DNA of 63,648 nt, counting the filler, from Octopus bimaculoides (taxonomy: Eukaryota): NCBI RefSeq assembly GCF_001194135.2. It is 4 parts of 4 records of this genome, joined end to end, with 100 filler letters (N's around TTAATTAATTAA, not from the genome) between each part and the next. Parts side by side here need not be neighbours in the genome. Positions count along the whole stretch, not along the records: positions 26,213 to 52,172 come from NC_068981.1; 3 more parts are not named here. One strand, given 5' to 3'. The notes below the pieces were generated by a model. It saw nothing but the letters and a program-made list of their open reading frames with translations. It had not been told where the DNA came from and did not search any database. The position numbers were made by a program, and so were the translations under genes. Numbering within the stretch: the stretch's first letter is position 1; every line of letters begins with the position of its first letter. Of the stretch, positions 26,213 to 53,553 are shown piece by piece.

Positions 26213-26300
26213 ATATATAGATTCAAGGTGAATATGGTACTTAAGTTTAGGCACCAGAGTTAAGTATGGTATTATCCAAACAATTCCAAAATAAGGTGAT

Positions 26301-26476
26301 TAAAATCAAAATAAGCGACAAGGATATCCAAACTTAATGCAGTACAATCATTTCATGTGACTCCATTTAATTAAGCAATGTGAACATTACATCAAATGTT
26401 TACGTTGCTTAATTAAATGGAGTCGCATGAAACGATCGTACTGCATTAACTTTGGCTATCCTTGTTGTTTATTTTG

Positions 26477-26483
<7 letters not shown>
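26301..26483. repeat. Long near-perfect palindrome (arms about 88 bp), probably a foldback/MITE core
   Basis: taaaatcaaaataag..gactccatttaattaagcaatgtgaacatt pairs with aatgtttacgttgcttaattaaatggagtc..tattttgatttta; centre near 26392. Confidence 0.9.
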
Positions 26484-26525
<42 letters not shown>

Positions 26526-26980
26526 ATAATTTTATGCCCACTTTCTGTAGTATATACAAAATTGGAGCTGAACCAAATGGGGATAGAAATACAACATTCA
26601 CTTTATTAGAACACACTAAACAGATCGTTTTCCTTCCTTCCCCTGTGTGTTTATGTATGTATTAACTCTCACCCAAAACACCGAATATATAATATTAATA
26701 GTAATTTAATTACAGTAGCAATAGAAAATTATATCACATCATATCACCACCTACTATAGAGGTAAAACATTACAGTAAAGACATATATTCTACTTTTGAC
26801 TTCAGTAGATTTATAATCACTACTCTCATACTTGCTTGAGACACATATTCCTCGCATATCTGTTAATTTCTTCCTCTCCGTGGTCTTCTGTTAACTCTAA
26901 ATACATGACTCTTGAGTTTAAAAAACAAATGGAGAGAGGGGTAGCTGTTGTTTTTGTTTTTCATTTTTTTAAATTTACAA

Positions 26981-27150
26981 CTACACTCTCTGAGTGGTTG
27001 GCGTTAGGAAGGGCATCCAGCTGTAGAAACTCTGCCAAATCAGATTGGAGCCTGGTGTTGCCATCCGGTTTCACCAGTCCTCAGTCAAATCGTCCAACCC
27101 ATGCTAGCATGGAAAGCAGACGTTAAACGATGATGATGATGATGATGATA
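26981..27150 (+). mobile_element. Short retroposon copy of the RTE-type 3' tail with (GAT)n end
   Basis: gagtggttggcgttaggaagggcatccagctgtagaaac..catgctagcatggaaagcagacgttaaacgatgatgat; same as 37120-37320 and 40463-40625. Confidence 0.85.
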
Positions 27151-28904
27151 ACAACTGGCTGAAGTCATGGCAAATGAGAGGTGTCAGTGTCAAGCGTTTC
27201 AATCAATGTCACAAAATTACAGACACTTACAAAGTGGCAGGCAAGCTGGCAGAATCAATTAGCATGCCGGGCAAAATGCTTAGCAGCATTTCATCTGTTT
27301 TTATGTTCTGTGTTCAAATTCCACTGCAGTCGGCTTTCCCTTTCATCCTCTTCTTTTTTCTTTTTATAGTTTCAGCTCAGAGCTGCGGCCATGCTGATAC
27401 ACGGTACATGGAACTGTACCGAGTATGGTCTCACTACCCGGTAATAGTCACAGAGACTACAAGAAGTTATGGAATATACCCTGTTCGAGTCCTCAGCTGG
27501 CAACCAGGGGACAAGTATTTATGTTCGACATGGTGGAATGGGATTTCACTGCACAAAAAAAAACTATACTCCGAAGAGTACAGTAAAATCAGCTCCCGTT
27601 TGCCACTTTACAAGACTATCTCAGCAATGATCTTGTAAATCATGTTGTAAAGAAGTTGCGAAAGTACTAGGTCAATGTAATCAACTTATTACGAACACTT
27701 ATTTTATTGTACTCATGTTAAGAGATCACTTAACTGTATAGATATTCAACCAGCACCAGTTCTACCAAGTCTCTTCTCTCAGAGCAGAAATGGCAATTTA
27801 TACATGCCTTTTCCACAGAAGTATCAACAACAGAAAGGAAGGAACTGGGAGTTGAACCTATGGTAAACTCTGTATATACAGCAGCATCACACTACCAAAT
27901 AGATTATTTCCTGTACAGCTATGATGTTGCAAATTTATTGAACAGGGATTTTTATGTTTGACGTCATTTTCCGGTAATGTGAGAGATCGAAGCTCTACTT
28001 ATCAACAAGTCCTAAAGAAAAAGGCTATATGTAATTGATACGAGACACTCCAGAAGATGAGGAAAAGAAGAAACATCTACTTGACCATCATCATCAGCAA
28101 CATAAGCAGCATAATCATCATTTAACATCTGCCTGCCTTGCTGGCATGGGTTGATCGCTTATAATTCAATTAACATCTAGGATGCATTATTGGAATATTA
28201 AATCGAATCTGTACTTAATTGATAGGCATCCTAACGATAGGCATCGACCCCAGAAAGATGAAAGGCAAAAATTTTCCTGGGTGGGATTTGAACTTGGAAT
28301 GTAAAAGGCCTTAACTAATTATTGCAGATGTTCTGGTTCTGCCAACAGAAGTGAAAACCATTTACTGCTAATTCCTCAAACCAACATTAGTTTATATTGG
28401 TTATCTGTGATATTCTTTCACACTCCCAATAAATTCATCTATTTCATAACACGGATGGACACAAAAAGAATTTATTTTAATATTTAGAGAATGGACTAAG
28501 ACTAGGATCAATAAAACAGAAATTAGATTAGTGGTGGAGAGGAGGGTAGCAGATTAGTGTATGAACGATAATAGTTAATATCACTGTCAATAAGGTTCTG
28601 TAACTAATACCTCCAACTATAAATAAGACTTAATACAAACCAAGAGTTCTATATGGTCATTCGATCAGCTAGAAATAACAGCTAAATCCCTTTCAAATCA
28701 CCCCCTTATGTTTGAATTCCAAGTGAAGCCACTAAATATAAGAAAACACCCACTGAACATGATTCTATAAGTCGTCATGTCAGACAAAAGATGTTGAAGA
28801 AGGACAAAGAAGTCAAGCACCATTTATGATACCTCACTAATAAATAATATTAATATCCTCACAGCCGAAAATTCCATCCAATATGTTTGCTGTTGAAAAT
28901 AGTA

Positions 28905-29363
28905 TTTATTATTATTTCTAAGTTTTGTCATAGGGCCGGCAATTTTGAGTGGGGTGAGAAGTTGATTACACCGACCGCAGTGCTCAACTGGTACTTATTT
29001 TATCGACCCTGGAAAAATAAAAGGCAAAGTAGACCTCGGCGGAATTTGAACTCGGAATGTAAAAAGACGGAAGACTTAGCGAGCGCTAAGCATTTTGTCC
29101 GACACACTAACGATTCTACCAGCTCGCTTTCATAATAATAATAATAATAACAATAATGGTTTCAAATTTTGCCACAAGGGCAGCCATTTGAGAGAGGGTA
29201 AGTCGACTATATCGACCCCAGTGCGTAACTGATACTTGATTTATCGACCCCGAAAGGATGAAAGGCAAAGTCGACCTCGGCGGAATTTGAACTCAGAAGG
29301 TAGCGACGGGCGAAATATCGCTACGCATTTCGTCCATCGTGTTAACGATTCTGCCAGCTCGCC

Positions 29364-29365
<2 letters not shown>
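28905..29365 (-). mobile_element. Two tandem family A SINEs separated by (TAA)n
   Basis: Copies at 28905-29130 and 29158-29365. Confidence 0.85.
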
Positions 29366-29417
<52 letters not shown>

Positions 29418-29908
29418 TAATGATGATGATGATATCGGCTCTCCTTCCCTTCACTGTTTCTCTCTAAAAAAAAAAATCGAAGCCAGGATTAGTAAAGGCT
29501 ACAGGCACAAAACCACATATTTTGGATCGGGGTTACAATCAAATCCAGCACCTCGACTTTATCGATTTCGATGGATGAAAGACAAATTTTACCTAAACCA
29601 GATTTGAACTCCTCNNNNNNNNNNNNNNNNNNNNNNCTCAAGAGTACATATACCCCTTTGTCAAATATGTGTCAGTGTGCACTTGGGTAAGTAATTAACT
29701 GCAACCTTAGAACCAAAGCAAAATTGTTTCGTTCTTTGGGGGCGGGGTTTCAGAATTACATGTTATTTTTCTTGGGTTAGAAATTATGATTTAAAAAAAA
29801 AACAGGCTATATTTGGCCAATATAAACACCGTATTCAATTTTATTTTCATTGATTACTTTATATATATGTGTGTGTGTGTGGTGTATTTATATATATATA
29901 CATATATA

Positions 29909-29961
<53 letters not shown>

Positions 29962-30858
29962 TGGGGAGAGAGAGCAATCGTAGATATACAACTAAAAATT
30001 TCCATACATAAAACATATAACTGAATAAACTAATATGGAATGTGTACACTTGTGTTTTAAATAGCCACTGTGTGTCTACGATAATAACCTGTATCATAGG
30101 TTCAAGGCCATAAATTAAGAGGGAGTACAGTCGATTATATATATATCTATCCCGAAAATATGAATGGCAAAGTTTGACGTAAGCAGGATTTGAACTCAAA
30201 ACGTAAAGAGGCGTTACATATCTTAGTTTCAACATTCGATTGCAGATCAAATCGGGTGCAGGGATTGAGGGGGGGGGGGGGTAACATCAAAAATTCGCTT
30301 CNNNNNNNNNNGGGGGGGGGGGGTAACATCAAAAATTCGCTTCGTAATTTGATGCTGTGCGGTACCTTATGTAAGTAGTTCTACTAAAGCTTCGAGCAGA
30401 CCAAAATTGTGTACGTAAAAATTGGTAGACGGAAACTTAAGTGGAAGCACGTCGGTGGCACCGTTCCTATTCTTGGGGTAGACTGAATTCGTTACTAGAT
30501 TTAATACTCCCACCTGAGTAGTAGAATCTGTTCCGTTGCAAGCATTCGGGCCAGATGTCCGGTTCCCCTACCTCCCATCAGGAACGGAGACTCCAAAAGC
30601 GCTATGGGCAACGTTCTACTTCTAAACCTTAAAAAGAATCGCATAAAAAAAATTCGCAGAAAGAAAGGGCATGAAGAAACAACTGTAAAAGTTTACTTGA
30701 ATGTGGATATATCACTAAGTGTTGCAACATGGATGAAAAAAACCATTGAACGAGGTACACACACACACACAGTGAAAGAGAGAAATATAAGTAGATAAAC
30801 AGACAGAAGTGAGAGTTGTGTCAATCTGCCACACTTCATTCATCATGAGGACATACAA

Positions 30859-31034
30859 GTGGGGTGATGTCCTCAATAAAGATTTTGGAAAGTCCCATTG
30901 AGTAATCGAGGTAAGAGTGGTGTTGACTATGATGTTGGGAGTGGTAGCAGTGGTGGTGGACAGGTAAGTGCCTGAAAAAAGGTGTGTAGTAGAATGTTGG
31001 TGACAAATGTAAAGGTGGTGTGATTAGTGGGCGG
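30859..31034 (-). promoter_or_regulatory. Candidate SREBP-binding intronic enhancer (two SREs plus GC box)
   Basis: Minus strand: ATCACCCCAC (canonical SRE-1) at 30859-30868, ATCACACCAC at 31015-31024; GGGCGG at 31029-31034 on the plus strand. Confidence 0.4.
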
Positions 31035-32493
31035 TCAGGTAGGACATGGTAAAATTATAGGCACGATATGATGGTTATTTTGGATCTGTAATGGATCAGT
31101 TCCACATGAATCCAGTCATTGTTTGTTGATACACATACAATCACATCAAACCAGAAAGAGAGCCCTGAAACCGTCACTGGAATTACTAGAAATAATAGCC
31201 AAATTAATCTTTAATCACAGATTATGTGGGTCTCAAAAAAAAAAGAATCTTTTTATGAAAAACAGGATGCTCATGGATGGAATGCTTTTGATCTTAAGCC
31301 TCCTGGAGCTAAATAACATCAACACAATGTATTTGGAAGTTGGAGTGGTAGTAGTACACTATGCATATTTGTGTGATATGACAATTTATCAGCTTCGAAT
31401 AAATGGGATGCACATGTTTAGCGCGCACTTACCACTAGAGATGACTCGTTTAATACAGAGCAGAGTTTGGTGTTTTTGTTGCAAAACACGATCTCTTAGA
31501 TTGAACAGAGCCACGATCAAAAGGCGTTACAATTATGATCATCCTATTGTCTTTAAAGCATAGTTTACCCCTGACTATATTATCCTTTCGGTCATTTATA
31601 TGTATTTTTTTTAAAGAGAGAGCGGTCTGAGGGAGAATTAGCTGCTATTTTTGTAGGTCTAGTGACCTGATAGTGGCTCTCCATTGGATCGACATCGACA
31701 GAGTTAAAGATCCAGGTAATTCTCTGAATGTTTGTGCAAGTACTATTCTACAGACTGATGCTACCATAAAGTTTCATTGCAATCACAAATGATATAAGTA
31801 TCAATACACCTTAAACATACATTATATATATAAGCAATATACATATTAGAATACAGTATGATGCAATTAGCAGATTTGTTATAACTGTAACATGGAGCCA
31901 ACATACATATACATGCACACACACACATATTATATATATATATATATATNNNNNNNNNNNNNNNNNNNNNNNNNNNNNNNNNNNNNNNNNNNNNNNNNNN
32001 NNNNNNNNNNNNNNNNNNNNNNNNNNNNNNNNNNNNNNNNNNNNNNNNNNNNNNNNNNNNNNNNNNNNNNNNNNNNNNNNNNNNNNNNNNNATATATATA
32101 TATATATATATATATATAGTGTGTGTGTGTGTTAATGTTTACTTGGATGTATCTATCAAAAAAAGATATACGTGTCTATCAACATTAAACATGTCAGTCT
32201 ACTATATAGTATGTGGAGAACAGTTTATTAAGCATTAGTACACTCATTGATATAATCAAAACAAGCACAGGTTGTTACATTTACAATCAGTATACACAAA
32301 ACACTACATAAGGTAATCGAAATGTCGAATGGCAGATTGATCCCCGATATTGTAACCACCGTGTGTTACTGAGTGATGTGGTGTGGTGTGGTGTGGTGTG
32401 GTGTGTGTTTATGTGCGTGTGTGAAACGCAAGAAGGAGCAATCACAACGGTACCGTAATGTCAATGACGGACAACAATACTACAAGGACTTAC

Positions 32494-32605
32494 CATCAAG
32501 ACCATTTAGCAAGACATTGTCGAGATCGGACGATGTAGTAAGGTCCGGCCCTAAATCGGGCAAAGAATCCGAAGAGATGTATAACCACCTCTGCGAGTCT
32601 GCCAT
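32494..32605 (-). CDS. First coding exon of a second gene; best guess SREBP (sterol regulatory element-binding protein)-like acidic N-terminus
   Basis: ATG in aaagATGG context with an in-frame TGA 12 nt upstream; strong donor GATG|GTAAGT; 37 codons + 1 nt: MADSQRWLYISSDSLPDLGPDLTTSSDLDNVLLNGLD|G. The end resembles SREBP-1a exon 1 (CDLDAALLTDIE|D, also phase 1). No downstream exon found in the window. Confidence 0.6.
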
Positions 32606-33225
32606 CTTTGTTGTTCAGTGAAGCTTCAACTAACGCCACGAGACGTCAGCCAATCAACACACGTCTTTACCATCGGATGATATTTCGTCATCACAGCTGC
32701 CGCTCTTGTTTCTACCACTGCCCCTGCTGCCGCGGCTCTCTCTCTCTCTCTCTCTCTCTCTTTTTCGCTCTCTCTCATTTTCGCTCTCTTCCTCTCATTT
32801 TCTCTCTCTCTGTCTCACTCTTTTTTCCTCTTCCCTGTTTTATTCGTATATATATTTATATACATTCTTATATATATAACATATATATATAATTTATAAG
32901 TGTGTGATAGAAATAGCTCTAGATATCATTACATATGTGTGTTTATAGCTGTGTATAGTGTATATAAATGTGTGTGACTGTGTGCGCGTGTGAGTGTATA
33001 TATATATGTGTGTGTGTGTGTTAACTCCCACCACACCTTGGAGCTATTGGTAACAACCCGTTAACGACTTGCTATCGTCACTTCCGCTCCGGTTACGTTT
33101 TATCCCGTTGCGCGGGTTTTGTCTCCCGTAAATATTGATTTACTTTGAGCTGACATAAAGCCAATCATATTATACAGTCATGTAGTCAAAGCCAGTTATA
33201 TTATCGGTGCTTATTCCATTGGTAC
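32606..33225 (-). promoter_or_regulatory. Promoter/5' UTR region of the 32605 exon
   Basis: NF-Y box AGCCAATCA at 32648-32656 and 33159-33167; CRE-like TGACGTC at 32642-32648; ETS+CRE composite CGGAAGTGACG at 33076-33086; local CpG enrichment around 33055-33130 against a CpG-poor background. Confidence 0.55.
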
Positions 33226-39769: not shown

Positions 39770-41625
39770 CTTATTCATCACTGTCCTTCACACCATAACA
39801 GAGTAATTTAAGATCAACTGTCATTGGGAACTACTATATGCTGATGATCTTACTCTTGGAGCAAAATCTGTAACACAATTAGAAAAGAAATTGCAGGTGT
39901 GGAAGCAAAACCTAGAATCTAAAGATCTTAATATTAACTTAGCAAAGAGTAAGGTTCTAGTAAGCAAGAAAACAGACAGGACACTACCCACCTTAGATAA
40001 ATGGCTTGATTGATATATAGGAAAGGTGTAGTTAGTAATCCCATACACTGTACCTAGTGCAAGCTATGGACACACACGAGGTGCAGTGGAATTGCAGGAA
40101 GGTTAATGGAGAGAGCAGTCTTTGTTTGTGGAAGATGCACAATTGCCATAAAGTCTGTGGTCACATGAGAAATTGATTTTCTCAAATGTTCTGGAGGTAC
40201 TAGATTGCTTCTGTTATCTACATGACCTAATTAGCAGTGGAGGATGTTCTGAAAGTGTAGTCACTAGAATAAGAGTAGGATAAAGTTCTGAGCTATAGCA
40301 TCTGTAGGTAACAAAAGGTCCCTCTCTACAAGTGAAAGGCAGATTGTATGATGCTTGTGTATGTACAGTGATGCTACATGGTAATGAGACATGGACGCTG
40401 AACACAGAAGACATGCAAAGACTTGAGAGGAATGGAAAAAATATGCTCTACTGGATGTGCAATACTCTTGGAGTGGTTGGCGTTAGGAAGGGCATCCAGC
40501 TGTAGAAACTCTGCCAAATCAGATTGGAGCTTGGTGCAGCCATCTGGTTCGCCAGTCCTCAGTCAAATCGTCCAACCACCCATGCTAGCATGGAAAGCGG
40601 ACGTTAAACAATGATGATGATGATGTATGTCAAAGTGCAAATGCATTGAAAGAAAAATTAGGTATTAGAGGAATCAGATGTAGCATACAAGAGAGAAGAT
40701 TGCATTGGTTTGATTATGAATATGGATGAGGGCAGTTGCATAAAGAAGTGCCAGTCACTTGAAGTGGAGGGAAGTTATAGAAATGGGAGACCCAGGAAGA
40801 CATAGGATGAAGTATTGAAGGCTGATCTCAAGATGTTGAGTCCTAAAGAGATGACAAAGGACTGGCATCTTGCTGTGCTCAAGAAGCCCTGCCCATCACA
40901 GCAAAAATGATATCATCCTATAACCCACATATGCTTGTATGTTTGAAGCTGTGTCCCCACTCTTTCCCTGACATGTCAAACATACCTTCTCCACCCATAC
41001 AATTGCCTCCTGTCACTGCCCTTTTAGCCATTACACACCATTCTACCCTGCTGTCATTCTCAATATCTTCCTTTATCTACCACCATAACTCACCTACTGT
41101 AAGCCCCTTATATATCCCAGCCTCTCCCTCTCCACAGCTCTTACACCTTGTTCTACTACTTTCCAGAATCACTCCAATATTTATCAACTCACACCATTGT
41201 TTTTCACTCACTACTGTTTATTCGCCTCACACTTATAAAAGTATTCACTCATCCCCTTTCATGCTCCTTGTTAAGTTTGCTCTAGTACCCCATCACTACC
41301 TTCTTATTACCTTCTCTATAGGAAGACACCTGTTCTTATCCCTCAATCATACTTTAACCTTTCACCCTCTGGCATACAGCCACTCATCTCCACTTTCCCC
41401 TCCCAAATACTTAGTAGTAGGAGCCTTTTCCTCGTCTTGAAAATTACAAGACAGCCTCACTAGGATTAGTGGCACACGTAAGGCACCCAGTACAATCTGT
41501 GAAGTGGTTGGTCTCAGGAAGGGCATACAGCTGTAAAATCCATGCCAAAGATGACAATGAAACTCACCAGTTCCATCAAACCATTCTACCTATGCCAGCA
41601 TGGAAAGCAGACATCAAATGATTAT
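39770..41625 (+). mobile_element. 5'-truncated, decayed RTE-clade LINE (RT C-terminus, Cys/His finger, 3' UTR) with a nested insertion at 40463-40625
   Basis: WELLYADDLTL..KKLQVWKQNLESKDLNINLAKSKV (RT YADD); HCT*CKLWTHTRCSGI..FVCGRC; KGRLYDACV..MLHGNETW; LKEKLGIRGIRCSIQERRLHWF; ends in the ggaagggcat..catgccagcatggaaagc tail. Confidence 0.85.
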
Positions 41626-43373: not shown

Positions 43374-43661
<288 letters not shown>

Positions 43662-44409
43662 TCAAATATAACAGCACCAGAATATTTAAAAAGAGCTGAT
43701 CTCAATTATCAGATGGACTACAAAATGTTACGATTATCCATTTCCAGCTACCTAATAACATCACCACAAACCTGCATTCAGATTACTCTGTCAAATGTAA
43801 GGTTAATTTATTCTCATTGTTTTTTAATTAATCATGCATTATCTTGTAGCTTCGAGATTTCAGAGATGTGACTTTATTTTTAATACGACATTGTAGGATA
43901 GGTGTGAGAGGCCATATCAGGCCAGTTTAAATGTTAAAGGGCCAAACACCCACAAATTTATCATTATTATTAGAACTGCATTACAGAAAACCAAGTATTT
44001 TGATTAATCCATACTAAAATTCCAACCAATATATAAACATCTAATTCCTTTAGTAGCCATCATTTGGTTCTTGTCTTGTGCAAACAAACTGCATTTAATA
44101 TAAAAACTTTATTCTGCCAGAATGAAACTAAGTAAAGTGTAAATTATAATAAATCTAATAAATATTTGATACAAATAAAAATTAGTTAAAGTACAACATG
44201 TAGCCTACAGCTTTTCAAAACCAACACAGAGAAAGTAAAATTTTGATGCTGTTGATATTTGCTGTAAATGTGACATCAAAAACGAGTGGAAAGACATTTC
44301 AGAAGTAAATTAAAAGATCTAATTCAAGTTTACAGATGTAAAAAAAAAAAAAGAAAAAGAAAAGAAAGTCATAAAACAAAACTAGATTTCATGTAGCTTT
44401 AATCCTTAC

Positions 44410-44533
44410 CTGATGGATAATACAAAGAGTTATCTTGTTTGATGTTTTCACTGACCATCTCATAAGGTGCAGATTTGCGGCTTTCAGGAGATAGATCATT
44501 CTTAGGTGAAAGAACAGTCCAACCATCAGCACA
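44410..44533 (-). CDS. SQSTM1: Sequestosome-1/p62 exon carrying the LC3/Atg8-interacting region (LIR)
   Basis: Acceptor ttttatgttcttttag, donor TCAG|GTAAGG; 124 nt, phase 0-1, exactly bridging the neighbouring exons. Reads CADGWTVLSPKNDLSPESRKSAPYEMVSENIKQDNSLYYPS(D); DGWTVL matches W-x-x-L (vertebrate DDWTHL). Confidence 0.92.
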
Positions 44534-45199
44534 CTAAAAGAACATAAAATAAAAGCAATCATTACAATTTTATCATCATCATTTAATGTCTGCCACACAC
44601 ATACAAACATCTGTATTTTGTGAAGCAAGTTTAGAAGGATGAGTTGGTACTGACAATTGTTAGTAGTTTACAAAGAGATTAAAGCATTCCAAAAATTTGG
44701 TCTGTTATGTTAACCAGCTTAACAGTTAATATATTATTGCGGGTTAATCTTCTAATATTTTATGTCCATTTCCCCATGCTGGCATCGTCTGAATGGGTTG
44801 TCACAGTCTGCATCATCTTTCATCCACAGCAACACAAAATCTACCAACATTTATGAATATCTACATTGCAGACCAACTGCATTTATCTTGCCACAAGTAC
44901 TAAAGAAGTTCTCTATCCTACACCAGTTATCTGGGTCTACTATCCTCCTAGACAGGCAGCTTTGTACAGTAGTTTTAAATTTTAATTCCTGATTATGTCT
45001 ATGTGCAAAAGCAGAAAAATCACTTATTAAAACAGAAGAGGCTCAATTTTTTTTTTTTTAAATAGGAAATGATAGAAATAAATAAGGTCTCAAAAGAAAA
45101 CAAGGGTTATAGAAATAGTTGTAGCAGACTAAACAACTACCCTCTTCATTGGTTTGCATGGATAAACAAAAAAATTAAGAAAACTTTAAAAAAACCTAC

Positions 45200-45696
45200 C
45201 AAGGTTTCACCAGCAGCAGGGGGAGCTTTAGTAGTTTCCTCATTTGCAGAGTAGTCAGTAGTGGTGCTAAAATCCCCACAAGTACTTTCTGATTTCTCAA
45301 CAGGTTTTTCAGGGGTAGTTTCCTCTTTCTTCTCGGCACCAGCTGCAGCAGCAGCAGAAGCTGCAGCTGCGGTAGCAGCAGCAGTGGCAACTGCATGGGC
45401 AATCTTATGAGCTTTTTCAGCAATATCAGCTGGTGACATATTAGGATCGGCAGCAGCATCATGATGAACATTGGTGAAGACATGTGGGCCACTAGTAAAC
45501 ACATGTGGACCGCTGGTAAATACATGTGGTTTGTGTGGGCCATGGGGACCCATAGGAGGAACTCCAAATGGTCCAAAGAAACCAAATGGAGGTGGTGGTG
45601 GTGGTGGGGGTGGATGTGGTCCATTTGCACCTGGGCGGCCACTGAAAACTTTATGGAATTGACCCTCTTTTTCCAGTTTCATATCCAACTCAATAC
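45200..45696 (-). CDS. SQSTM1: Sequestosome-1/p62 exon: GIELD motif followed by Pro/His/Gly/Ala-rich low-complexity region
   Basis: Acceptor tcattccttttag, donor TTG|GTAGGT; 497 nt, phase 1-0. Starts (G)IELDMKLE (vertebrate GIEVDIDVE), in the frame of ORF 45146..45688. Confidence 0.92.
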
Positions 45697-46267
45697 CTAA
45701 AAGGAATGATAAACATTAAATGAAAAATCACCAAAAAAAAAATTAAAATAAATAAATAAATAAATAAATAAAATTAGCGGGTAACAGAACTAATGAAATG
45801 GTTTCATATTTGACAATTAGACAAATTGCATGAATGAAAGTTAATTTGGTTTAAAACTGAAAAAGTTGTAAACAAGATTACTTAACCCTTTCATTACCAA
45901 CCCAGCTGAAACCGGCTCTGCCTGAGTATAAATGTCTTGTTTTCATAAACTTTGAATTAAAATCTTCCAAACCTTAGTCACAATTTATGTTCTTAACATT
46001 AGCTGAGTAATAACTAAATTATTTTACTAAATTCTTTGTTATATTTAAAGTAATTGAAAGAAACACAGAGCATCTCAAAATAAATACAGTAACGAAAGGG
46101 TTAAAATGCTGAGAAAATTTCCATTTAAGACAAAATATGAAAATAACAGCAGTAGTTATCTTAAATCAGATGATTTTTTTTTTTTTAGTACAAGAAGCCT
46201 TTAAAACAGGTTAACTTTTCTGTAATTAGATTGGCTAGCAAACTAATAGTTTCATGAGATCTCTTAC

Positions 46268-46481
46268 CAAATGGGTTCAGCACAGAGGATAAGTGCTCTC
46301 CAAGATTTTGGAACATGTTTTGAGCATATCCTGGAGGTCTTTTAGCTTCGTCTTTGTCTTTTTTCTCATCTGGTGTCTTGTTGGTAGTAGAAGAGGATGA
46401 AGTTGTTGAGCTGAAAGAACAACCTCCGGGGCCAGCAAAAGTGAAGCTATAATCACCACCATCTTTTGGGCAATATTGAGG
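46268..46481 (-). CDS. SQSTM1: Sequestosome-1/p62 exon: Ser/Thr-rich linker ending in the conserved NLGEHLSSVLNPFG helix
   Basis: Acceptor atttctattgtacag, donor TTTG|GTAAGA; 214 nt, phase 0-1. Reads PQYCPKDGGDYSFTFAGPGGCSFSSTTSSSSTTNKTPDEKKDKDEAKRPPGYAQNMFQNLGEHLSSVLNPF(G); compare vertebrate NVGESVAAALSPLG. The ORF-track ORF here is a different frame. Confidence 0.92.
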
Positions 46482-46694
46482 CTGTACAATAGAAATATTC
46501 CATTAGTTAAAAAACAAATTCAGTTGAGTTTTTGCATTTTAGTCATGGGTTTTTTAAGGAAGTATTTGTGTACATACAAAGTTTTCAATTCTTATTCACT
46601 ATACTTTTTATACATGGGCAAACACTAACAAATACATTTTAAATTGCTTAAAATTTTAATATTTGAGGATTAAAAATTTTTTTTAATATTTTCT

Positions 46695-46895
46695 ACTCTA
46701 GGCACAAGGCATGAAATTTTTGGGGAAGGGGCCAGTTGATTTGATCAATCGATCCCAGTACTTAATTTATTGACCTCGAAAGGATGAAAGGCAAAGTTGA
46801 TCTTGGCGGAATTTGAACTCAGAACGTAAAGACAGATGAAATATCGCTAAGCATTTCGTCCGGTGTGCTAACATTTCTGCCAGCGTGCCGCCTTA
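46695..46895 (-). mobile_element. Family A SINE in a p62 intron
   Basis: Full-length motif match to 36083-36290. Confidence 0.85.
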
Positions 46896-47254
46896 AAATT
46901 TAAAAATATCCATCTAAAACTAATTTTGAAACCTGATATTAAAATACAACTAGCTGCCAGCAAGGATACAGTATTTCATTTTGTAACCATAATATACTTT
47001 ATAGTATATTAAAGGCTCACATGATATTGTGCCTTACTTTAGTGTTAGCAGTTTAATGCGATCGAAAATAAAATATAAGTAATGGGTCTAAGCGCATATT
47101 TCAAGAGTTACTGCTTTCCATCAACTTCACATCCAACCCATCAATTGCCCACACTAGTTGATGGAAGTGCAACTGGCTCCTGTCAACTGTCCTACCCATG
47201 CATGCATGGAAGATTTACATTAAATGATGATTATATATATAATAAATAATAAAT

Positions 47255-47504
47255 AAATGCGCCCTTTTAAAGCCTAGCCAAGTTCAAGGGCCTAGTTTCC
47301 CGGTTTCAATGGTGTATGTGTTCCCCAGCTGGATGGGACGCCAGTCCATCGCAGCGTTACTCATTTTTGCCAGTTGAGTGGACTGGAGCAACGTGAAATG
47401 AAGTGTTTTGCTCAAAAACACAACGAATCGCCCGGACCAGGAATCGAAACCACAATCTTACGATCACGGTGCTGACACCCTAACCACTAAGCCACACACC
47501 TCCA
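47255..47504 (-). mobile_element. CORE-like SINE (family B, tail type 3) in a p62 intron
   Basis: Same head and centre as 7971 and 8440, but tail gctgcgatggactggcgtcccatccagctgggg..gaaaccggg..aaaagggcgcattt. Confidence 0.8.
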
Positions 47505-47744
47505 CATATATATATATATCAGGTGATAGCTGTGAATGCCACTGTCATACAAGCAGTGTCATTTACTTCCAACATCCAGCATAGACATGTCTGGCCATGG
47601 GAAAATATTACCTTACTTGGAAACTGAGAAGAGATAACAACAAGAAGGGCCCTAGAAATTCAACCATGTAATGATTGAGAGCATGAAAAAAAAAATGGAT
47701 GTTAAAATGATAATGAATTTTTGGGGGATTCTTATACCTTATAT

Positions 47745-48070
47745 CCCTTGCTCAAGTCATCAGACTGCGACCATGCTGGGGCATAGCTTTGAAGTCTGAC
47801 AAGTAGAAGCCAGTACCTTTTTTTTTTAAAGCCTGGTACTTATTCCGTTGGTCTCTTGTTCCAAGCACGCTGACACCAATTGTCAAGTGGTGGTGGGAAA
47901 CAAACATAAGGCACAAAAACACACATACATATATACATGATGGGCTTCTTTCAGTTTCTGCCTACCAAACCCTACACACAAGGCTACAGCTGCCCTAAGT
48001 ATCATGCAATGGGACTGAATCTGGAACCAAGAGGTTGGGAAGTAAACTTACCACACAACCATGCCTGCAT
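47745..48070 (-). mobile_element. Family C SINE in a p62 intron
   Basis: Colinear with the reverse complement of 61896-62297. Confidence 0.75.
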
Positions 48071-48170
48071 CTATATTAATCGATATAGCTTTTTACAGAG
48101 CTCTTTGTTAAGCAGCTTCTTGAAAAGAATTATGTTAAGATTAATATAAAAACCCGAAATCAACACTTAC

Positions 48171-48376
48171 AGGAACCATTCCTGGAATAGGAATCTTCAT
48201 CATTGGATGTTCTGGATGACAATCCTTTTTCTCACACTCTTGGCAAAGATCATAGTCAGGACAAGCAAGACATTTGAAACGAGGACCACTTATTTGTTTA
48301 TCACAACCATCACAGATCACATGAGGATGCACTGCTTCATCAGCTCCAGTTTCAGGCATTGGTTTCGAATCATTTA
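48171..48376 (-). CDS. SQSTM1: Sequestosome-1/p62 exon: ZZ-type zinc finger
   Basis: Acceptor ttctctatttacag, donor CCT|GTAAGT; 206 nt, phase 1-0. Encodes HPHVICDGCDKQISGPRFKCLACPDYDLCQECEKKDCHPEHPMMKI (ZZ Cys/His pattern). Lies within ORF 48141..48458. Confidence 0.96.
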
Positions 48377-48385
48377 CTGTAAATA

Positions 48386-48945
48386 GAGAAATATTCAGAT
48401 CTTTTTTAAAACGGGGGCCACATTTTTCATTAACGAAACACTTTGAAACTTGGAACACTGGTAGAATGTGTCATATAAAACATCTTTTTCTCTTAGTCTT
48501 TAAAAAAAAAGAAATCCATAACTTATTCCATGTTAAAGTTGTCGTATTTCTGTAATTTCAACCAATCACTGACGTCCATTCAGCCGATATACATTAAGTG
48601 CCAACTACATAAACAAACGATTCTGAAACAATTAACCCTAACCCTAAGGTTAGGGTTAGGGTTAAAGCAAATAAAACGAAGGTATGGAGATTAAATACAC
48701 TTTACATCACTTAATCAGCCAAAGGAGTAAATATAAACAACTGAATACTTGTCAGTGATTGGTTGAAATTATCGAAATAAGACAATTTTTTTACATGAAA
48801 TAAATTTGAATACAAAAATATTTTTCTGTTCTATAACACAAAATAGATAAGTATACGAAGTTTGAAAGTCTTTCCGTACCAAAAACACTACGTAAAACAT
48901 TAATGAAAAATGTGGCCCCCATTTTAAAATAGATCCAAATATTCT
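48386..48945. mobile_element. Foldback/MITE with nested inverted repeats and a central telomeric-repeat palindrome
   Basis: Outer IR gggggccacatttttcattaa (48413-48433 / 48900-48920); inner IR ttgtc.tattt..taatttcaaccaatcactgac (48539-48573 / 48751-48785); centre ttaaccctaaccctaa-gg-ttagggttagggttaa. Confidence 0.85.
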
Positions 48946-49984
48946 TAATACAGAGATAATACAGGATATGTTTCATCACAAGCTATAAATACTGAGTAAA
49001 TAAGGGAACTGATCCGTTTCAACAGTTAAGTATTCTCTTTAACCCACAACAATTTGAACCAATTAAGATTGGAGCAATTAGTTAATCTAGTTATATTTAG
49101 CTTGCAGTTTACTTTCAATTACTCTTACATAGGGTTTATTCTTCTCATATCCAACTTCATAACTAATTCCTTCAAGTACTTACTAGTACATCTCAGTTTC
49201 AAGATATCAGAACTGTGAAATCTAAAGCAACACCTATCACTGTGAGTCTAATCAGAAGCTATTAGTTAATTTCCAGTGTTATTCTACACAACCATCCATT
49301 GAAATTGTTTATTTTCGTCACAAACCAATGCTTTGTAAAGGCTACCAAACTTTCTTAGTCAATGATAGAATCTAGAATCCAAAAAAGGTATATAAGCCTA
49401 TGAACTCTTAGGCTTAATTTCCTAATGAATACTTGTATAATGCACTAATACTTTGACTGGCTTTGGTTAGTGGACTACAGCAATGCTGGCACACTACTGA
49501 CAAGGTGTTCAGTCAGTTATAATCTATTGCCAAAACACACAATGGAGCCTGGTGCAGTTCTTTGGCTTGCCAGCTCCTGTCAAACTGTCCAACTCAGGCC
49601 AATATGGAAGATGAGTGTTAAACGATAAGGATTCTCAAATGGTTAACTTGGCACAAAAGGATGATTCACACAATAAAAATCCACAAGAAATTTCTACATA
49701 AATTTATAGTCAATCCAGTGCAATTCATTCGAACATAATGGGATTATGTACAAGCTGCCTGCCAAATTTCAGCAAAAGACCTGAGCCCAAACTATCACAC
49801 AAAAGTATTTAACTCAAAAATAAACAGATGCAAAGCAACATTCTTAACTACAAAATTATTCACATTGTAGCAAGCCTGCTACTCTTCAAATGGTTTATAA
49901 AATGTAAGTGTTAATAAAAAATCATTTCTCTTCAATGTCTATTAACAGTAAAATAGCCAGTTACTGAAATACATATTCTTCTCT

Positions 49985-50365
49985 ACTCTAGGCACAAGGC
50001 CCAGAATTTTGGGGGGAGCGGCCAGTCAATTAGATCAACTCCAGTATGCAACTGGTATTTTATCGACCCTGAAAGGATGAAAGGCAAAGTTGACCTTGAC
50101 AGAGTTTGAGCGCAGAACATGAAAACAGTCGAAATACTAAGCATTTCGCCCAGCATGCTAACGTTTCTGGCAGCTCGCCACCTTCGGTGCTGAAATATGT
50201 ATTTCTTTATTGCCCACCAGGGGCTAAACATAGAGGGGACAAACAAAGACAAAGGGATTAAGTCGATTACATCGACCTCAGTGTGAAACTGGTAAAGGAT
50301 GAAAGGCAAAGCCGACCTCGGCAGAATTTGAACTCAGGACATGCTAACGTTTCTGCCAGCTCACC
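49985..50365 (-). mobile_element. Tandem family A SINE copies in a p62 intron
   Basis: Copies at 49985-50185 and 50195-50365; the second has the same ttattgcccac..ggggacaaacaa tail variant as 232-345. Confidence 0.85.
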
Positions 50366-50544
50366 AATTTAATTACCAAAATATATATTGCCATAGAACT
50401 ATCAGAGGAAAGAAAGGTAATGCTGGTAAAACTTTCTATTATTACACAAGCAATATTACAATACTGTAAAAATGTCCATTTCAACCCTGATATGGAACTT
50501 GTGTATTGATATTTTAATGGAGATGTGAAATTTATATAACTTAC

Positions 50545-50640
50545 CTTTGATTATGATTTTAAAGATTGAACTATCAAGAGAAGTTACAGCTTCGTTTAAC
50601 TCATTGTCACTTGTGAATCTTATCAGATCAGTATCAGAGT
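50545..50640 (-). CDS. SQSTM1: Sequestosome-1/p62 exon: C-terminal (acidic OPCA) half of PB1 domain
   Basis: Acceptor ctttattttttctgcag and donor G|GTAAGT; 96 nt, phase 1-1. Reads (D)SDTDLIRFTSDNELNEAVTSLDSSIFKIIIK(V), matching the p62 motif [32 protein letters not shown]. Not in the ORF track. Confidence 0.93.
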
Positions 50641-53553
50641 CTGCAGAAAAAATAAAGAAGTGAAATGTTATATATTTTAATCAATAGAATTAACAACATC
50701 CAACAGAAACTTTATATACATGTAGGCGTGTGAGGATATATAGGTAGTAAACCATTACATCAAGAATTGTGTGAAATGACAATGCAAAATAATTAAAATC
50801 ATAAATTATTCCAGTATACTGTTTAATTTATAATGAATACTCCATAAAATAAAACATTTTCCCACTGACTGCTATCAATTTCATTTAAGCACCCCCCCCC
50901 CCAAAAAAAAAAGAGAGGCTAATGTTGGAACCACCTGTAGACGGAAACTAGAATGAGATTCTGCGCAGGTTGCCTACCAAATTTCATCAGAAGCACTAGC
51001 TGACCTTAGCCAAAACTATCACGCAATAATATTCAACTTAAAACAACATGGTTGCACAGTAAAATTCTTAACTACAAAATTATTCACACAAATCCTCATC
51101 AATAAATTCACGGTCACTTTGAAGTTCTATAAACACACTTAGCTTCAATAGACATGGTGGAGGCTTCCAATATTGTTATTACTATATAGAATGGGCCGTT
51201 TTCTCAATATCAGCTCGCATTTGAAATTTGTTTCAAATGTGCAGCCACCCTCAATACTTTTTAACTGGCCAAGTTTAAAAAGAATTCCTTTGGTATTCTG
51301 TAGAAAAATAAATCCATGATTATCTAAAATATCTCAATCCCCAATGGATACATTTTGTATAGGGATGGCGTAAAAAAAAAAAAAAAAAAAAAAAAAAACT
51401 TTATCAGTGAAATATATTTGATAATCATTCGTCATAAATCTTCAAAATAATCCTTTCTGCAGCCATTGGCAGTGAATAGAGATAAGAATCGTGGGAAAAT
51501 ATATATACATTTTGTCCTTCAATGCAGAGGATAGAAAAGTTTCTAGAGAATATGGACAGGTCAGATATATATAGAATTAAGTGGAGGGCAAGAAGGAGCC
51601 GTCATAGAATTATTCCACTCATTTGCTATAAGTTGCATTACTGAGGATACCTTGAGGAAAGGCATTAACACCACAACTTTAACGTTAGTAAAGCTTTATA
51701 CTTTGTAAAATTAAAAAAAAAAAAACAGCAGTTAATTGTCAATATATCTGGCCTAAAAAAGCTAAATTGCACAATTCCCATGAATCTCTCTCAGTCAAAA
51801 TACATTCATTCAGAATTAATAAACGCAATTAGCTAGCACTGATTTTATATTACATATATAGTGACATTCATAAACAGTCCTGCTCACAATATGCTGCGAG
51901 TCCTATTGGAAAAAAAACATTGTTGCCATATCAACGATTAGTACACATATTCGTTAGATATTCACACACAAATAAATCAATCAAGGGAATAAATATCGAT
52001 GCTTTACGTTTTGCAAGAAAGATGTACATCGATACTCCAGTTCTATACACACACATATTGTATAGGAACAACTATGATCATTGCCTTTTAGTCAAAACAG
52101 TGAAAATACTGGTTTGGATATCAAAACTAATAGCATTTTAAAAATAAACATTACAAAAAAAAAAAAAAAAAANNNNNNNNNNNNNNNNNNNNNNNNNNNN
52201 NNNNNNNNNNNNNNNNTTAATTAATTAANNNNNNNNNNNNNNNNNNNNNNNNNNNNNNNNNNNNNNNNNNNNTATATATATATATATATATATGTACGTA
52301 TATATATGTAATATATATATTACTCGTAATAAGACCGCATAACATTCACACCCTTATCAAAGAACGTAAGCTGGCTTCAGCTAAGATTCGGAGATATTCC
52401 ATGGAAAAATCAACACTGGAGATTACTTCTTGGTTTACGGAAAAAAAAACAGAGAAAAATAATATTTTTCATATATGGTCCAACGAGGTACATGACCTAC
52501 ATGACCATGAGTAAAAGGAAACTAAAGCTTCCTCAAATCTCGTCTTATCGTTCCCAAAAGGGCAGTGCGAGACATCTCCCAGCATGGCCGCAGTCTAATG
52601 AATGAAACAAATGAAAGAGAAAAGATAAATGTTGTCAAAAACGTATAATCCACCGCAAAGATATTTGCATTCATTCGTCAGTGTAAAGCAGGCTGTTGTA
52701 ACAGCTACTCTCACAAAATAATTGTTTGAATCCTTTTCAAAAACAATTCTAAGAGATATTATATACGCTACAGCACAAGTGTTAAGCAATTCAACCTCAA
52801 ATGCCTTAATTCTAAATCATAGATTCTTGTTTCCCCGATAAGAGGCCTCTTGTACACTGAGGGTTGTGATATTATCGCTTGCAATGAAAAAAATATAAAG
52901 AGATAGTCAATCTTCAAAAGGTCATTCGCATGTTACATGGAAGATCGCGCAATATATCTTGATAAAACTGTAATTCTTTATCAACCCTGCTCTGGAAAGC
53001 TGAGCAGAAACCATAAAATAACGAAACACGATACAACTTTAGCAATTGTATCTTACTTCAAGTATCTTGTCATCATGTTAAACAGAGGGTGCATACTTTA
53101 ATGACGAGATCGCAACTAGAATACAGAAGTTGTGGATATCTTGTAGATATCTTTTTATTACAGTCTGAATAATTTACACAAAATATCACCTCCAAAACAA
53201 GCATTTTTGTGTGTCGCATTTTATGGCTTTTCAATATAGACAGTAAATTCAAAACATGCCAAGCAGTTGGAAAGTTTTCAGCAAAAATGTCTTTGATAAT
53301 TATTAGATGTATGTTAGATTTTAAATGAGTTATGTAATATAGCAGACGAAAGTTTGCAGGTTATATAATTTCATATAGAAGAAAGAAGACCCCCCAAAGT
53401 GTCTATTCTTATGGAGAGCTATGTTCTGGCGAATGGCTTCCGAACAAGCCAAATTTAAGATGCAAGAACTACCTTAAGTCTGATCTTCAAAAAGACAATT
53501 ATGAAAGTAGAAAGTTCGGAGATTATTGCAACTGATAGGAAATCGCAGAGAAA

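What the first reader, a model, noticed from the sequence alone, without database searches (positions are those of the whole stretch)
32494..32605. Hidden first coding exon of a probable SREBP gene, invisible to the ORF track
Seen: a 37-codon acidic peptide (MADSQRWLYISSDSLPDLGPDLTTSSDLDNVLLNGLD) starts at an ATG with an in-frame stop just upstream and ends at a consensus GATG|GTAAGT donor, beside a CpG-rich promoter. Known: SREBP-1a exon 1 ends ..DLDAALLTDIE|D with a phase-1 intron, and SREBP N-termini are acidic activation domains. Inferred: this is the SREBP orthologue, with a first intron probably longer than 32 kb, since no exon 2 was found downstream.
Basis: partly seen in the sequence, partly recalled or inferred. 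Interest (0 to 1): 0.72.

Follow-up and report, generated by a model that had tools for sequence, protein, structure and literature searches.

The report
First coding exon of octopus SREBP
This short stretch is the real first protein-coding exon of the octopus version of SREBP, the master regulator of lipid synthesis; it is an ordinary, conserved gene part, but it sits next to a promoter module that is recognisably the same from octopus to rat.

Summary
On the minus strand an ATG at 32605 opens 37 codons (MADSQRWLYISSDSLPDLGPDLTTSSDLDNVLLNGLD). An in-frame TGA lies four codons upstream. The exon ends at 32494 in GATG|GTAAGT, a phase-1 donor.

A cuttlefish transcript (L002) carries the orthologous peptide, 76% identical. 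It is spliced at the same position, in frame, to an 1134-residue SREBP body with the HNAIEKRYR basic region. Limpet, abalone, scallop, zebra mussel, hemichordate and amphioxus SREBPs start with the same motif. The phase-1 intron position is identical in Pecten, Patella, Aplysia, Dreissena, amphioxus, and rat and frog SREBF2.

The window is Octopus bimaculoides. Its UniProt SREBP model (A0A0L8H136) lacks this exon. No octopus RNA evidence was available.

This is an ordinary orthologous exon. The more interesting result is a by-product. At 29-86 nt upstream of the ATG lies a module, ATGACG-N4-ATCATCCGAT-N15-TGATTGG-N6-CTCGTGG. It is conserved in molluscs and amphioxus and has the layout of the functional SRE plus CCAAT (NF-Y-type) box of mammalian SREBF2. 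That suggests ancient SREBP self-activation.

The parts
32494..32605 (-). Coding part of SREBP exon 1. It holds the ATG (32605-32603), 37 codons and the first base of codon 38, and encodes the N-terminal acidic activation segment.
   Evidence: Searches give the sequence and translation. One search gives 76% identity to the cuttlefish peptide. Searches show the orthologous exon spliced in frame to SREBP. One search aligns it with other SREBP N-termini.
32488..32493 (-). 5' splice donor GTAAGT of intron 1, a phase-1 intron. The exon side reads GATG.
   Evidence: The same position and phase occur in Pecten, Patella, Aplysia, Dreissena, amphioxus, rat SREBF2 and Xenopus SREBF2.
32615..32617 (-). 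In-frame TGA four codons upstream of the ATG. It fixes 32605 as the start codon.
32606..32721 (-). Conserved 5' leader / proximal promoter. It aligns with the cuttlefish 5'UTR.
   Evidence: L001 49-266 aligns to window 32721-32502 at 73.5% identity, E = 3.5e-32.
32672..32691 (-). ATGACG (32691-32686), then a 4-nt spacer, then the SRE-like decamer ATCATCCGAT (32681-32672). The human SREBF2 promoter has the same layout, ATGACG-N4-ATCACCCCAC.
   Evidence: The human sequence comes from mutagenesis primers in PMC5517566.
32647..32656 (-). Inverted CCAAT box, TGATTGGCTG. Its reverse complement is CAGCCAATCA, an NF-Y-type site. It overlaps a CRE-like TGACGTCT at 32648-32641.
   Evidence: It is conserved at the same spacing in six invertebrate loci and in rat SREBF2.
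32634..32642 (-). Conserved CTCGTGGCG box of unknown factor.
   Evidence: TCGTGG is shared by octopus, cuttlefish, Patella, Pecten and amphioxus.
32300..33200 (.). CpG-rich, unmethylated-type region spanning exon 1 and the sequence upstream of it.
   Evidence: CpG o/e is about 1.0-1.5 here, against 0.43 for the piece.
26213..32487 (-). The part of intron 1 held in the piece. It contains an assembly gap of 143 N at 31950-32092 and no further SREBP exon.

Best explanation
Bases 32605-32494 on the minus strand are the coding part of exon 1 of the single SREBP orthologue of Octopus bimaculoides.

What the exon encodes:
- Translation starts at the ATG at 32605.
- The 37 residues are 7 Asp against 1 Arg. 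They form the first half of the N-terminal acidic activation domain.
- The conserved core ...D-L-D-N-x-L-L-N-G-L-D|D-M-I-x-Y is completed by exon 2.

Splicing: the exon is spliced from the phase-1 donor G|GTAAGT to an exon 2 beyond the left edge of the piece. Intron 1 is therefore longer than 6.3 kb.

Inferred from established SREBP biology:
- The full protein is an ER-membrane precursor.
- Its N-terminal bHLH-Zip half, carrying this activation domain, is released by S1P/S2P cleavage when lipid is scarce.
- The released half activates lipid-synthesis genes.

Inferred from the conserved module 29-86 nt upstream of the ATG (SRE-like site, inverted CCAAT box, CTCGTGG box):
- The gene is probably driven by SREBP itself together with NF-Y.
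- Mammalian SREBF2 is regulated this way.
For: Shown here:
- ORF, upstream stop and donor.
- A unique database hit to a cuttlefish peptide, E = 1.7e-10.
- My predicted exon1+exon2 junction protein matched a real 1193-aa transcript product at 100% identity and 100% coverage (P0002). L001 and L002 differ only by a 112-nt insert exactly at that junction.
- The transcript's protein is an SREBP. It carries [16 protein letters not shown], DRSR and NP in TM1, and an RxxL loop. Its best PDB hit is SREBP-1a, and mollusc SREBPs are its best named hits.
- N-terminal alignment: 50% identity to Patella and Haliotis, 42% to Pecten.
- Identical intron position and phase in seven other genes.
- Coding-type substitution pattern.
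- The window is O. bimaculoides. Its p62 exons are 100% identical to XP_014776341.1.
- That species has an SREBP model (A0A0L8H136) lacking its N-terminus.
- A p62/SQSTM1 gene also neighbours SREBP in Pecten and amphioxus.
- Promoter module: one hit in the window with 0 expected, and one hit just upstream of the SREBP ATG in each of 7 loci. Upstream alignments give z = 8-16.

From the literature:
- The human SREBF2 SRE ATCACCCCAC is functional (PMC5517566).
- SREBP1c and SREBP2 are self-activated through SREs (PMC10815951).
- SREBP-1a exon 1 encodes 29 acidic-rich residues (PMC10815951).
Against: - No octopus transcript or spliced read was available. Neither protein search returned an octopus product containing this peptide.
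- Exon 2 and all later exons lie outside the piece. Linkage to the O. bimaculoides bHLH model is therefore inferred, not shown.
- In cuttlefish an isoform (L001) inserts a 112-nt stop-containing exon after exon 1, so exon 1 is not always translated into SREBP.
- The octopus SRE-like decamer matches the canonical SRE at only 7 of 10 positions.
- In cuttlefish the module lies inside the transcript. That is unusual for a core-promoter element.
Confidence: 0.93

Rival explanations
1. The 37-codon frame mostly acts as an upstream ORF or leader. A stop-containing cassette exon would be spliced in after exon 1, as in cuttlefish contig L001. SREBP would then be translated from the Met at the start of exon 2. 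The product would be an SREBP-1c-like protein lacking the exon-1 acidic residues, or an NMD target.
For: - L001 carries exon 1, a 112-nt insert with a stop, then exon 2.
- L010 and L012 carry the same insert.
- Seven of 10 cuttlefish contigs break exactly at the first base of exon 2, as expected at an assembly-graph branch.
Against: - The in-frame isoform exists. It is represented by three cluster members of 1193 aa (P0002, P0397, P0399), seen on 6 contigs.
- The peptide is conserved as protein from molluscs to vertebrates, which a mere leader would not be.
- No sequence similar to the cassette is found in the octopus piece.
- This reading complements the main one rather than replacing it.
Confidence: 0.05
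2. The exon is a relic or duplicated fragment that is no longer connected to a working SREBP gene.
For: Only that no downstream exon is visible within the 6.3 kb available, and that no octopus transcript was found.
Against: - The ORF is intact, the donor is a perfect consensus, and the Kozak context is strong.
- The codon substitution pattern indicates purifying selection.
- The upstream module is strongly conserved.
- The region is CpG-rich.
- The p62 neighbour is conserved.
- Cephalopod introns are commonly long (general knowledge).
Confidence: 0.015
3. It is the first exon of a different membrane-bound transcription factor, such as a CREB3/ATF6-type bZIP, or a chance ORF.
For: None was found. 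Acidic N-termini are common in activators.
Against: - The orthologous cuttlefish exon is joined to an SREBP, not a bZIP.
- The motif MAD..W...PDLGPD...D.DN..L..(I/L)D|D is specific to SREBP N-termini.
- Chance is excluded by E = 1.7e-10 against 5.8 billion proteins and 3.5e-32 at the DNA level.
Confidence: 0.005

Closest known systems
Mollusc SREBP genes: Pecten maximus, Patella caerulea, Haliotis discus hannai SREBP-1, Dreissena, Aplysia
   Same: - The N-terminal motif is the same, with 42-50% identity over 37 residues.
- Exon 1 has the same size (36-38 codons plus 1 nt).
- The phase-1 donor sits at the same position.
- The upstream module and its distance from the ATG are the same.
   Different: - Octopus intron 1 exceeds 6.3 kb, against about 1.8 kb in Pecten.
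- Bivalves keep a near-canonical SRE (ATCACCCCAT). Octopus, cuttlefish, Patella and amphioxus have ATCATCCGAT.
- The p62 neighbour is head-to-head with SREBP in Pecten but in tandem in octopus.
Sepia esculenta SREBP transcripts (Logan contigs L001, L002)
   Same: - The exon is orthologous: 76% aa and 75% nt identity.
- The 5' leader is conserved.
- The splice point is the same.
- The full SREBP ORF lies downstream.
   Different: - The cuttlefish leader has an in-frame upstream ATG (MATSVSDW...). The octopus frame is closed by TGA.
- The cuttlefish 112-nt cassette exon is not found in the octopus piece.
Human SREBP-1a exon 1 and SREBP-2 exon 1
   Same: - Both encode a short acidic first exon. 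SREBP-1a exon 1 has 29 aa with 8 acidic residues (PMC10815951).
- The motif ends in ..LL.DI(D/E)|(D/E)ML.
- I read the phase-1 intron directly in rat and frog SREBF2.
- The region functions as a transcriptional activation domain.
   Different: - Identity is low (30-33%) outside the D-x-D..LL..I-D core.
- Vertebrates have two genes and, for SREBF1, alternative first exons 1a and 1c. Octopus appears to have one gene.
- I did not read the human SREBP-1a exon boundary itself from genomic DNA.
Autoregulatory SRE + NF-Y promoter of mammalian SREBF2 / SREBF1c
   Same: - The order and spacing match: ATGACG, 4 nt, the SRE decamer, then GATTGG(CT) after 16 nt in octopus and 17 nt in rat.
- Literature states that these SREs mediate feed-forward self-activation (PMC10815951, PMC5517566).
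   Different: - The octopus decamer differs from ATCACCCCAC at 3 of 10 positions.
- The module lies 29-86 nt upstream of the ATG, and within the cuttlefish 5'UTR. In rat it lies about 300 nt upstream.
- Binding and lipid responsiveness are untested.

Membership tests
SREBP (SREBF) gene | The N-terminal acidic segment is homologous to SREBP N-termini, with core D-x-(D/E)-N/x-x-L-L/x-x-(I/L)-(D/E). | tested here: met
   identity is 76% to cuttlefish, 50% to Patella and Haliotis, and 30-33% to vertebrate SREBP1. The peptide has 7 Asp against 1 Arg.
SREBP (SREBF) gene | Exon 1 ends one base into the codon after the ..(I/L)(D/E) motif (phase-1 intron), and exon 2 starts (D/E)-M/I-.. | tested here: met
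   The window reads GAT G|GTAAGT. The boundary is identical in Pecten, Patella, Aplysia, Dreissena, amphioxus, rat SREBF2 and Xenopus SREBF2. The junction is realised in cuttlefish mRNA.
SREBP (SREBF) gene | A bHLH-leucine zipper with Tyr in the basic region (..IEKRYR..). | not testable with these tools
   These exons lie outside the piece. The feature is present in the orthologous cuttlefish transcript. It is also present in the O. bimaculoides model A0A0L8H136, whose linkage to this exon is inferred.
SREBP (SREBF) gene | Two transmembrane segments, an S2P DRSR/NP motif, a luminal RxxL S1P site and a C-terminal SCAP-binding domain. | not testable with these tools
   These lie outside the piece. 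By eye, the cuttlefish P0002 has MLDRSRIATCMF..AFNPF and GRNLLS. The O. bimaculoides P0003 has MLDRSRLALCMF..AFNPF and SRSLLV.
SREBP (SREBF) gene | The exon is spliced to SREBP exons in the organism's own RNA. | not testable with these tools
   No octopus transcript containing the peptide exists in the searched collections.
SRE + NF-Y autoregulatory promoter (SREBF2 type) | An SRE decamer ATCACCCCAC or a close variant. | tested here: inconclusive
   The octopus decamer ATCATCCGAT matches at 7 of 10 positions. It is identical in cuttlefish, Patella and amphioxus. Pecten and Dreissena have ATCACCCCAT, matching at 9 of 10.
SRE + NF-Y autoregulatory promoter (SREBF2 type) | An adjacent inverted CCAAT box at a fixed distance, with the conserved ATGACG flank. 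| tested here: met
   The pattern TGACG-N4-ATCANNCNA-N10-22-ATTGG gives 1 hit in the window with 0 expected. It gives one hit upstream of the SREBP ATG in each of L001-L005, L007 and L008.
SRE + NF-Y autoregulatory promoter (SREBF2 type) | Bound and activated by SREBP and NF-Y, and lipid-responsive. | not testable with these tools
   This needs EMSA or ChIP and reporter assays.

The most novel reading that the evidence does not exclude
The module next to this exon has four parts: an ATGACG flank, an SRE-like decamer, an inverted CCAAT box and a CTCGTGG box. It may be a single orthologous cis-regulatory element inherited from the protostome-deuterostome ancestor. It is still alignable between octopus, gastropods, bivalves and amphioxus, and its SRE/CCAAT core is still alignable with mammalian SREBF2. 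If so, SREBP self-activation with NF-Y would be more than 550 million years old, and this would be one of very few promoter sequences conserved across Bilateria.
Probability: 0.55. Interest if true: 0.6.

Novelty: already known. Interest (0 to 1): 0.3.

Why it matters
As a gene feature it matters only for annotation. It restores the missing N-terminal activation domain to the Octopus bimaculoides SREBP model; UniProt A0A0L8H136 starts about 160 residues too late. It also fixes the gene's start and promoter.

The by-product matters more. The promoter module is sequence-conserved from molluscs and amphioxus to the experimentally defined SRE/NF-Y unit of mammalian SREBF2. That gives a directly testable case for ancient feed-forward control of lipid homeostasis. 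It is also a rare example of non-coding conservation across Bilateria.

Tried and rejected
- **Exon 2 in the piece.** I searched 26213-32493 (minus strand) with tblastn using the cuttlefish protein. I repeated it with sensitive tblastn and a D[MILV][ILVM]x[YF][IMLV] regex, using five mollusc exon-2 segments and the O. bimaculoides model. Nothing credible turned up.
- **The 112-nt cuttlefish cassette.** It has no match in the piece.
- **miR-33 or any Rfam family in the piece.** There were 0 hits at gathering thresholds.
- **Upstream in-frame extension as coding.** The cuttlefish extension MATSVSDW... is rejected. The octopus frame has a TGA, Pecten has a stop and no ATG, and amphioxus reads the shared DNA in another frame.
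- **A conserved uORF in the leader.** Rejected for the same reason. Octopus would have a 21-codon uORF from 32691 if that region is transcribed.
- **NCBIfam scan of the cuttlefish protein.** No hit; that library covers prokaryotes.
- **Genomic look-ups.** The O. bimaculoides model (P0003) and the Ptychodera protein (P0058) are not on record.
- **Literature.** A search for SRR8281669 and SRR8281677 gave no relevant paper. The species was obtained instead through SRR23936182. A search for a prior description of the invertebrate SREBP promoter module found none, but the library is incomplete.

Full report
**1. The observation**

The feature is on the minus strand.

- The ATG is at 32605-32603, in the context AAAG-ATG-G.
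- It opens 37 codons, MADSQRWLYISSDSLPDLGPDLTTSSDLDNVLLNGLD.
- One further G (32494) is followed by GTAAGT (32493-32488). This is a consensus donor that interrupts the next codon after its first base, so the intron is phase 1.
- An in-frame TGA lies four codons upstream (32617-32615).
- The peptide has seven Asp, one Arg and no Glu or Lys.
- CpG observed/expected is about 1.0-1.5 from 32300 to 33200. The 26-kb piece averages 0.43. The "CpG-rich promoter" remark therefore holds.

All elements of the observation are confirmed. The gene runs towards lower coordinates, so only 6.28 kb of "downstream" sequence (26213-32493) is available. That stretch includes a 143-N assembly gap at 31950-32092.

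**2. Is it more than chance?**

A 37-codon ORF by itself means nothing, but three results show it is real.

- A search of 5.8 billion proteins with the 41-residue ORF returned exactly one candidate, P0001, at 76% identity and E = 1.7e-10.
- P0001 lies on a 4,072-nt transcript contig (L001), upstream of an 1134-residue ORF with an HLH domain.
- At the DNA level, L001 49-266 aligns to window 32721-32502 at 73.5% identity, E = 3.5e-32.

Within the exon, 15 codons are identical, 13 differ only synonymously and 9 change the residue. Differences by codon position are 11/1/16. That is the signature of a translated sequence.

**3. What it belongs to**

The 1134-residue ORF is an SREBP.

- It contains [22 protein letters not shown], the Tyr-containing basic region.
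- It has MLDRSRIATCMF...AFNPF, the site-2 protease motifs in the first membrane segment.
- It has an RNLL in the loop and the long C-terminal regulatory domain.
- Its best solved-structure match is the SREBP-1a bHLH-Zip, 1am9, at 9.4e-30. SREBP-2 is next.

In L001 the exon-1 frame and the SREBP frame are separated by 112 nt that contain a stop codon. I predicted that removing these 112 nt would give ...LLNGID|DMIKYMYPEGQ. This resembles vertebrate ...LLSDID|DMLQLI. I then searched with that hypothetical protein.

- It matched a real product, P0002 (1193 aa, contig L002), at 100% identity over 100% of the query.
- L001 and L002 are collinear, apart from four minor differences downstream, except for the 112-nt insert. 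The insert sits exactly between the G that ends exon 1 and the AT that begins exon 2.

So in this relative the exon is spliced in frame to SREBP, at the position where the octopus sequence has its GTAAGT donor.

**4. Species**

An upstream gene on the same strand encodes ZZ (2.4e-11) and UBA (6.4e-17) domains. Its six exons in the piece are 100% identical, inside exon boundaries, to Octopus bimaculoides sequestosome-1 (XP_014776341.1 / A0A0L8H131). They are less similar to the O. vulgaris/sinensis protein. The window is therefore O. bimaculoides.

The comparator transcripts are from the cuttlefish Sepia esculenta. One of the runs that encodes the identical protein, SRR23936182, is an S. esculenta larval library (PMC10571815).

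The only O. bimaculoides SREBP model I could retrieve is UniProt A0A0L8H136 (1039 aa, 66% identical to the cuttlefish protein). It begins at MLINQPQLQ..., which aligns to cuttlefish MIISQSPLQ... about 160 residues into the 1134-residue ORF. It therefore lacks this exon. No protein in the searched collection contains the octopus exon-1 peptide.

**5. Comparison with other SREBPs**

The N-termini of SREBPs from the following species align with the octopus peptide:

| Species | Identity to octopus peptide |
|---|---|
| Patella | 50% |
| Haliotis | 50% |
| Pecten | 42% |
| Dreissena | 44% |
| Ptychodera (hemichordate) | 42% |
| Amphioxus | 33% |
| Frog and bird SREBP1 | 30-33% |

The shared motifs are MAD..W, PDLGPD and D-x-(D/E)-N-x-x-L-x-x-(I/L)-(D/E).

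I read the exon 1 boundary directly in genomic DNA of eight species:

| Species | Exon 1 end |
|---|---|
| Octopus (window) | GATG\|GTAAGT |
| Pecten | TTTGAAG\|GTAAGG |
| Patella | GTAGATG\|GTAAGT |
| Aplysia | CTTGGAG\|GTAGGA |
| Dreissena | ATTGATG\|GTATTC |
| Amphioxus | ATTGACG\|GTGAGT |
| Rat SREBF2 | ATCGACG\|GTGAGT |
| Xenopus SREBF2 | ATTGACG\|GTAAGA |

The position and phase are identical in all eight, so this intron predates the protostome-deuterostome split.

A review states that human SREBP-1a exon 1 encodes 29 residues, eight of them acidic, and forms part of the activation domain. It also states that the shorter exon 1c gives a weaker activator (PMC10815951). By homology, the octopus exon encodes the first half of the activation domain.

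**6. What is not there**

- No exon 2 is present between 26213 and 32493. Intron 1 therefore exceeds 6.28 kb.
- No Rfam family, including miR-33, reaches threshold in the piece. In other animals miR-33 lies in a far-downstream intron (my own knowledge), so its absence here says nothing.
- No octopus RNA evidence could be obtained. Use of the donor is inferred from orthology.

**7. Mechanism**

Shown:
- the start codon, acidic peptide and donor;
- orthology to a spliced SREBP exon;
- the conserved intron phase.

Inferred from established SREBP biology:
- The precursor sits in the ER membrane.
- When lipid is scarce it is escorted to the Golgi and cut by the site-1 and site-2 proteases.
- The released N-terminal half uses this acidic segment to recruit co-activators, and uses the bHLH-Zip to bind SREs.

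**8. The promoter module (by-product)**

Immediately upstream of the ATG, the octopus sequence reads as follows:

| Element | Coordinates (minus strand) |
|---|---|
| ATGACG | 32691-32686 |
| AAAT spacer | 32685-32682 |
| ATCATCCGAT | 32681-32672 |
| 15 nt | 32671-32657 |
| TGATTGGCTG | 32656-32647 |
| ACGT | 32646-32643 |
| CTCGTGGCG | 32642-32634 |
| 28 nt | 32633-32606 |
| ATG | 32605-32603 |

The same arrangement, at nearly the same distance from the ATG, occurs in:
- cuttlefish (ATGACGTAATATCATCCGATGG...TGATTGGTCAACGTCTCGTGGCG);
- Patella;
- amphioxus (ATGACGTAAAATCATCCGATGT...TGATTGGTCCGATTCTCGTGGTC);
- Pecten (GTGACGAAAAATCACCCCATCC...TGATTGGCTGTTGGCTCGTGGTG);
- Aplysia;
- Dreissena, which lacks the TGACG part.

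Statistics:
- The pattern TGACG-N4-ATCANNCNA-N10-22-ATTGG occurs once in the 52-kb window, with 0 occurrences in 100 shuffles.
- It occurs exactly once in each of seven loci, always just upstream of the SREBP ATG.
- Local alignments of the 120 nt upstream of the octopus ATG with the other invertebrate upstream regions score z = 8-16. None of 2,000 shuffles reached the observed score. Against rat SREBF2 the score is z = 3.

The reading frames across the block differ between species, so the constraint is on DNA or RNA, not on a peptide.

The link to known biology comes from mutagenesis primers published for the human SREBP-2 promoter. They give the sequence CGATGACGCGCC-ATCACCCCAC-GCACCGCTTCG, and the paper calls this SRE canonical and functional (PMC5517566).

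- Rat SREBF2 reads ATGACGCGCCATCACCCCAT, then 17 nt, then GATTGGCTAATG.
- This is the same ATGACG-N4-decamer-spacer-inverted-CCAAT layout.
- CAGCCAATCA is a textbook NF-Y site (my own knowledge).
- SREBP-1c and SREBP-2 are known to activate their own promoters through SREs, with NF-Y sites alongside in the SREBP-1c promoter (PMC10815951, PMC2582599).

I therefore propose that this module is the ancestral autoregulatory unit of the SREBP gene. There are three reservations:
- The octopus decamer matches the canonical SRE at only 7 of 10 positions.
- The cuttlefish transcripts include the module in their 5'UTR.
- Nothing about binding has been tested.

**9. Verdict**

The feature is the first coding exon of the octopus SREBP orthologue. 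It is a known kind of exon in a known gene, of interest mainly as an annotation repair.

The interest score is low to moderate. It rests mostly on the conserved promoter module, which I could document but not test functionally.

Noticed in passing
window 32634-32691 (minus); L001 83-140; L003 2915-2975; L004 1923-1985; L005 1928-1990; L007 1912-1965; L008 1195-1245: A promoter/5'-leader module sits just upstream of the SREBP start codon. It consists of an ATGACG flank, an SRE-like decamer, an inverted CCAAT box and a CTCGTGG box. It is conserved in octopus, cuttlefish, limpet, scallop, sea hare, zebra mussel and amphioxus. Its SRE/CCAAT core is shared with rat and human SREBF2.
   Followed up: yes
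window 43377-50659 (minus): exons about 50659-50546, 48386-48171, 46490-46266, 45700-45197, 44533-44411, 43523-43377: The sequestosome-1 (p62/SQSTM1) gene of Octopus bimaculoides lies about 10 kb upstream of SREBP on the same strand. Its first exon is outside the piece. A PB1+ZZ+UBA gene also neighbours SREBP in Pecten (L003) and amphioxus (L007). There it is head-to-head with SREBP, so the adjacency is ancient but the orientation differs in octopus.
   Followed up: partly
L001 275-386; L010 about 394-505; L012 1-112: Cuttlefish SREBP transcripts include an alternative 112-nt exon between exons 1 and 2. It carries a stop codon, so the product would start at the Met of exon 2 and lack the exon-1 acidic residues (SREBP-1c-like), or the transcript would be degraded. 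Seven of 10 contigs break exactly at the first base of exon 2. L010 has two extra T before the cassette, so the acceptor is uncertain.
   Followed up: partly
L001 395 (A) versus L002 326 (G): An A/G difference changes Lys to Glu in the fourth codon of exon 2 (DMIKYM versus DMIEYM) between two cuttlefish runs. It could be a SNP or A-to-I RNA editing. Two other differences (G/A, C/T) argue for ordinary polymorphism.
   Followed up: no
window 33040-33130: A second CpG-rich block lies about 450 bp upstream of the ATG. It has an ETS-like CACTTCCG, a CCAAT and a TGACG half-site. It may be an upstream or divergent transcription start, and it has no counterpart in the cuttlefish contigs.
   Followed up: no
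window 32626-32691 (minus): If transcription starts upstream of the module, as in cuttlefish, the octopus leader holds a 21-codon uORF (MTKYHPMVKTCVDWLTSRGVS*). It ends 20 nt before the main ATG. It is not conserved as a peptide in other species.
   Followed up: partly
window 31950-32092, 32360-32410, 32740-32800: There is an assembly gap of 143 N flanked by (AT)n and (GT)n inside intron 1. A (GGTGT)n-type microsatellite lies just inside the intron, and a (CT)n tract lies just upstream of the conserved leader. The gap means the true intron sequence near the donor is incomplete.
   Followed up: no
window about 27026-27127 and about 40427-40534 (plus): Two copies of a dispersed repeat translate to ...ETLPNQIGAW.... 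It is probably a transposable-element fragment in intron 1 and in the intergenic region.
   Followed up: no
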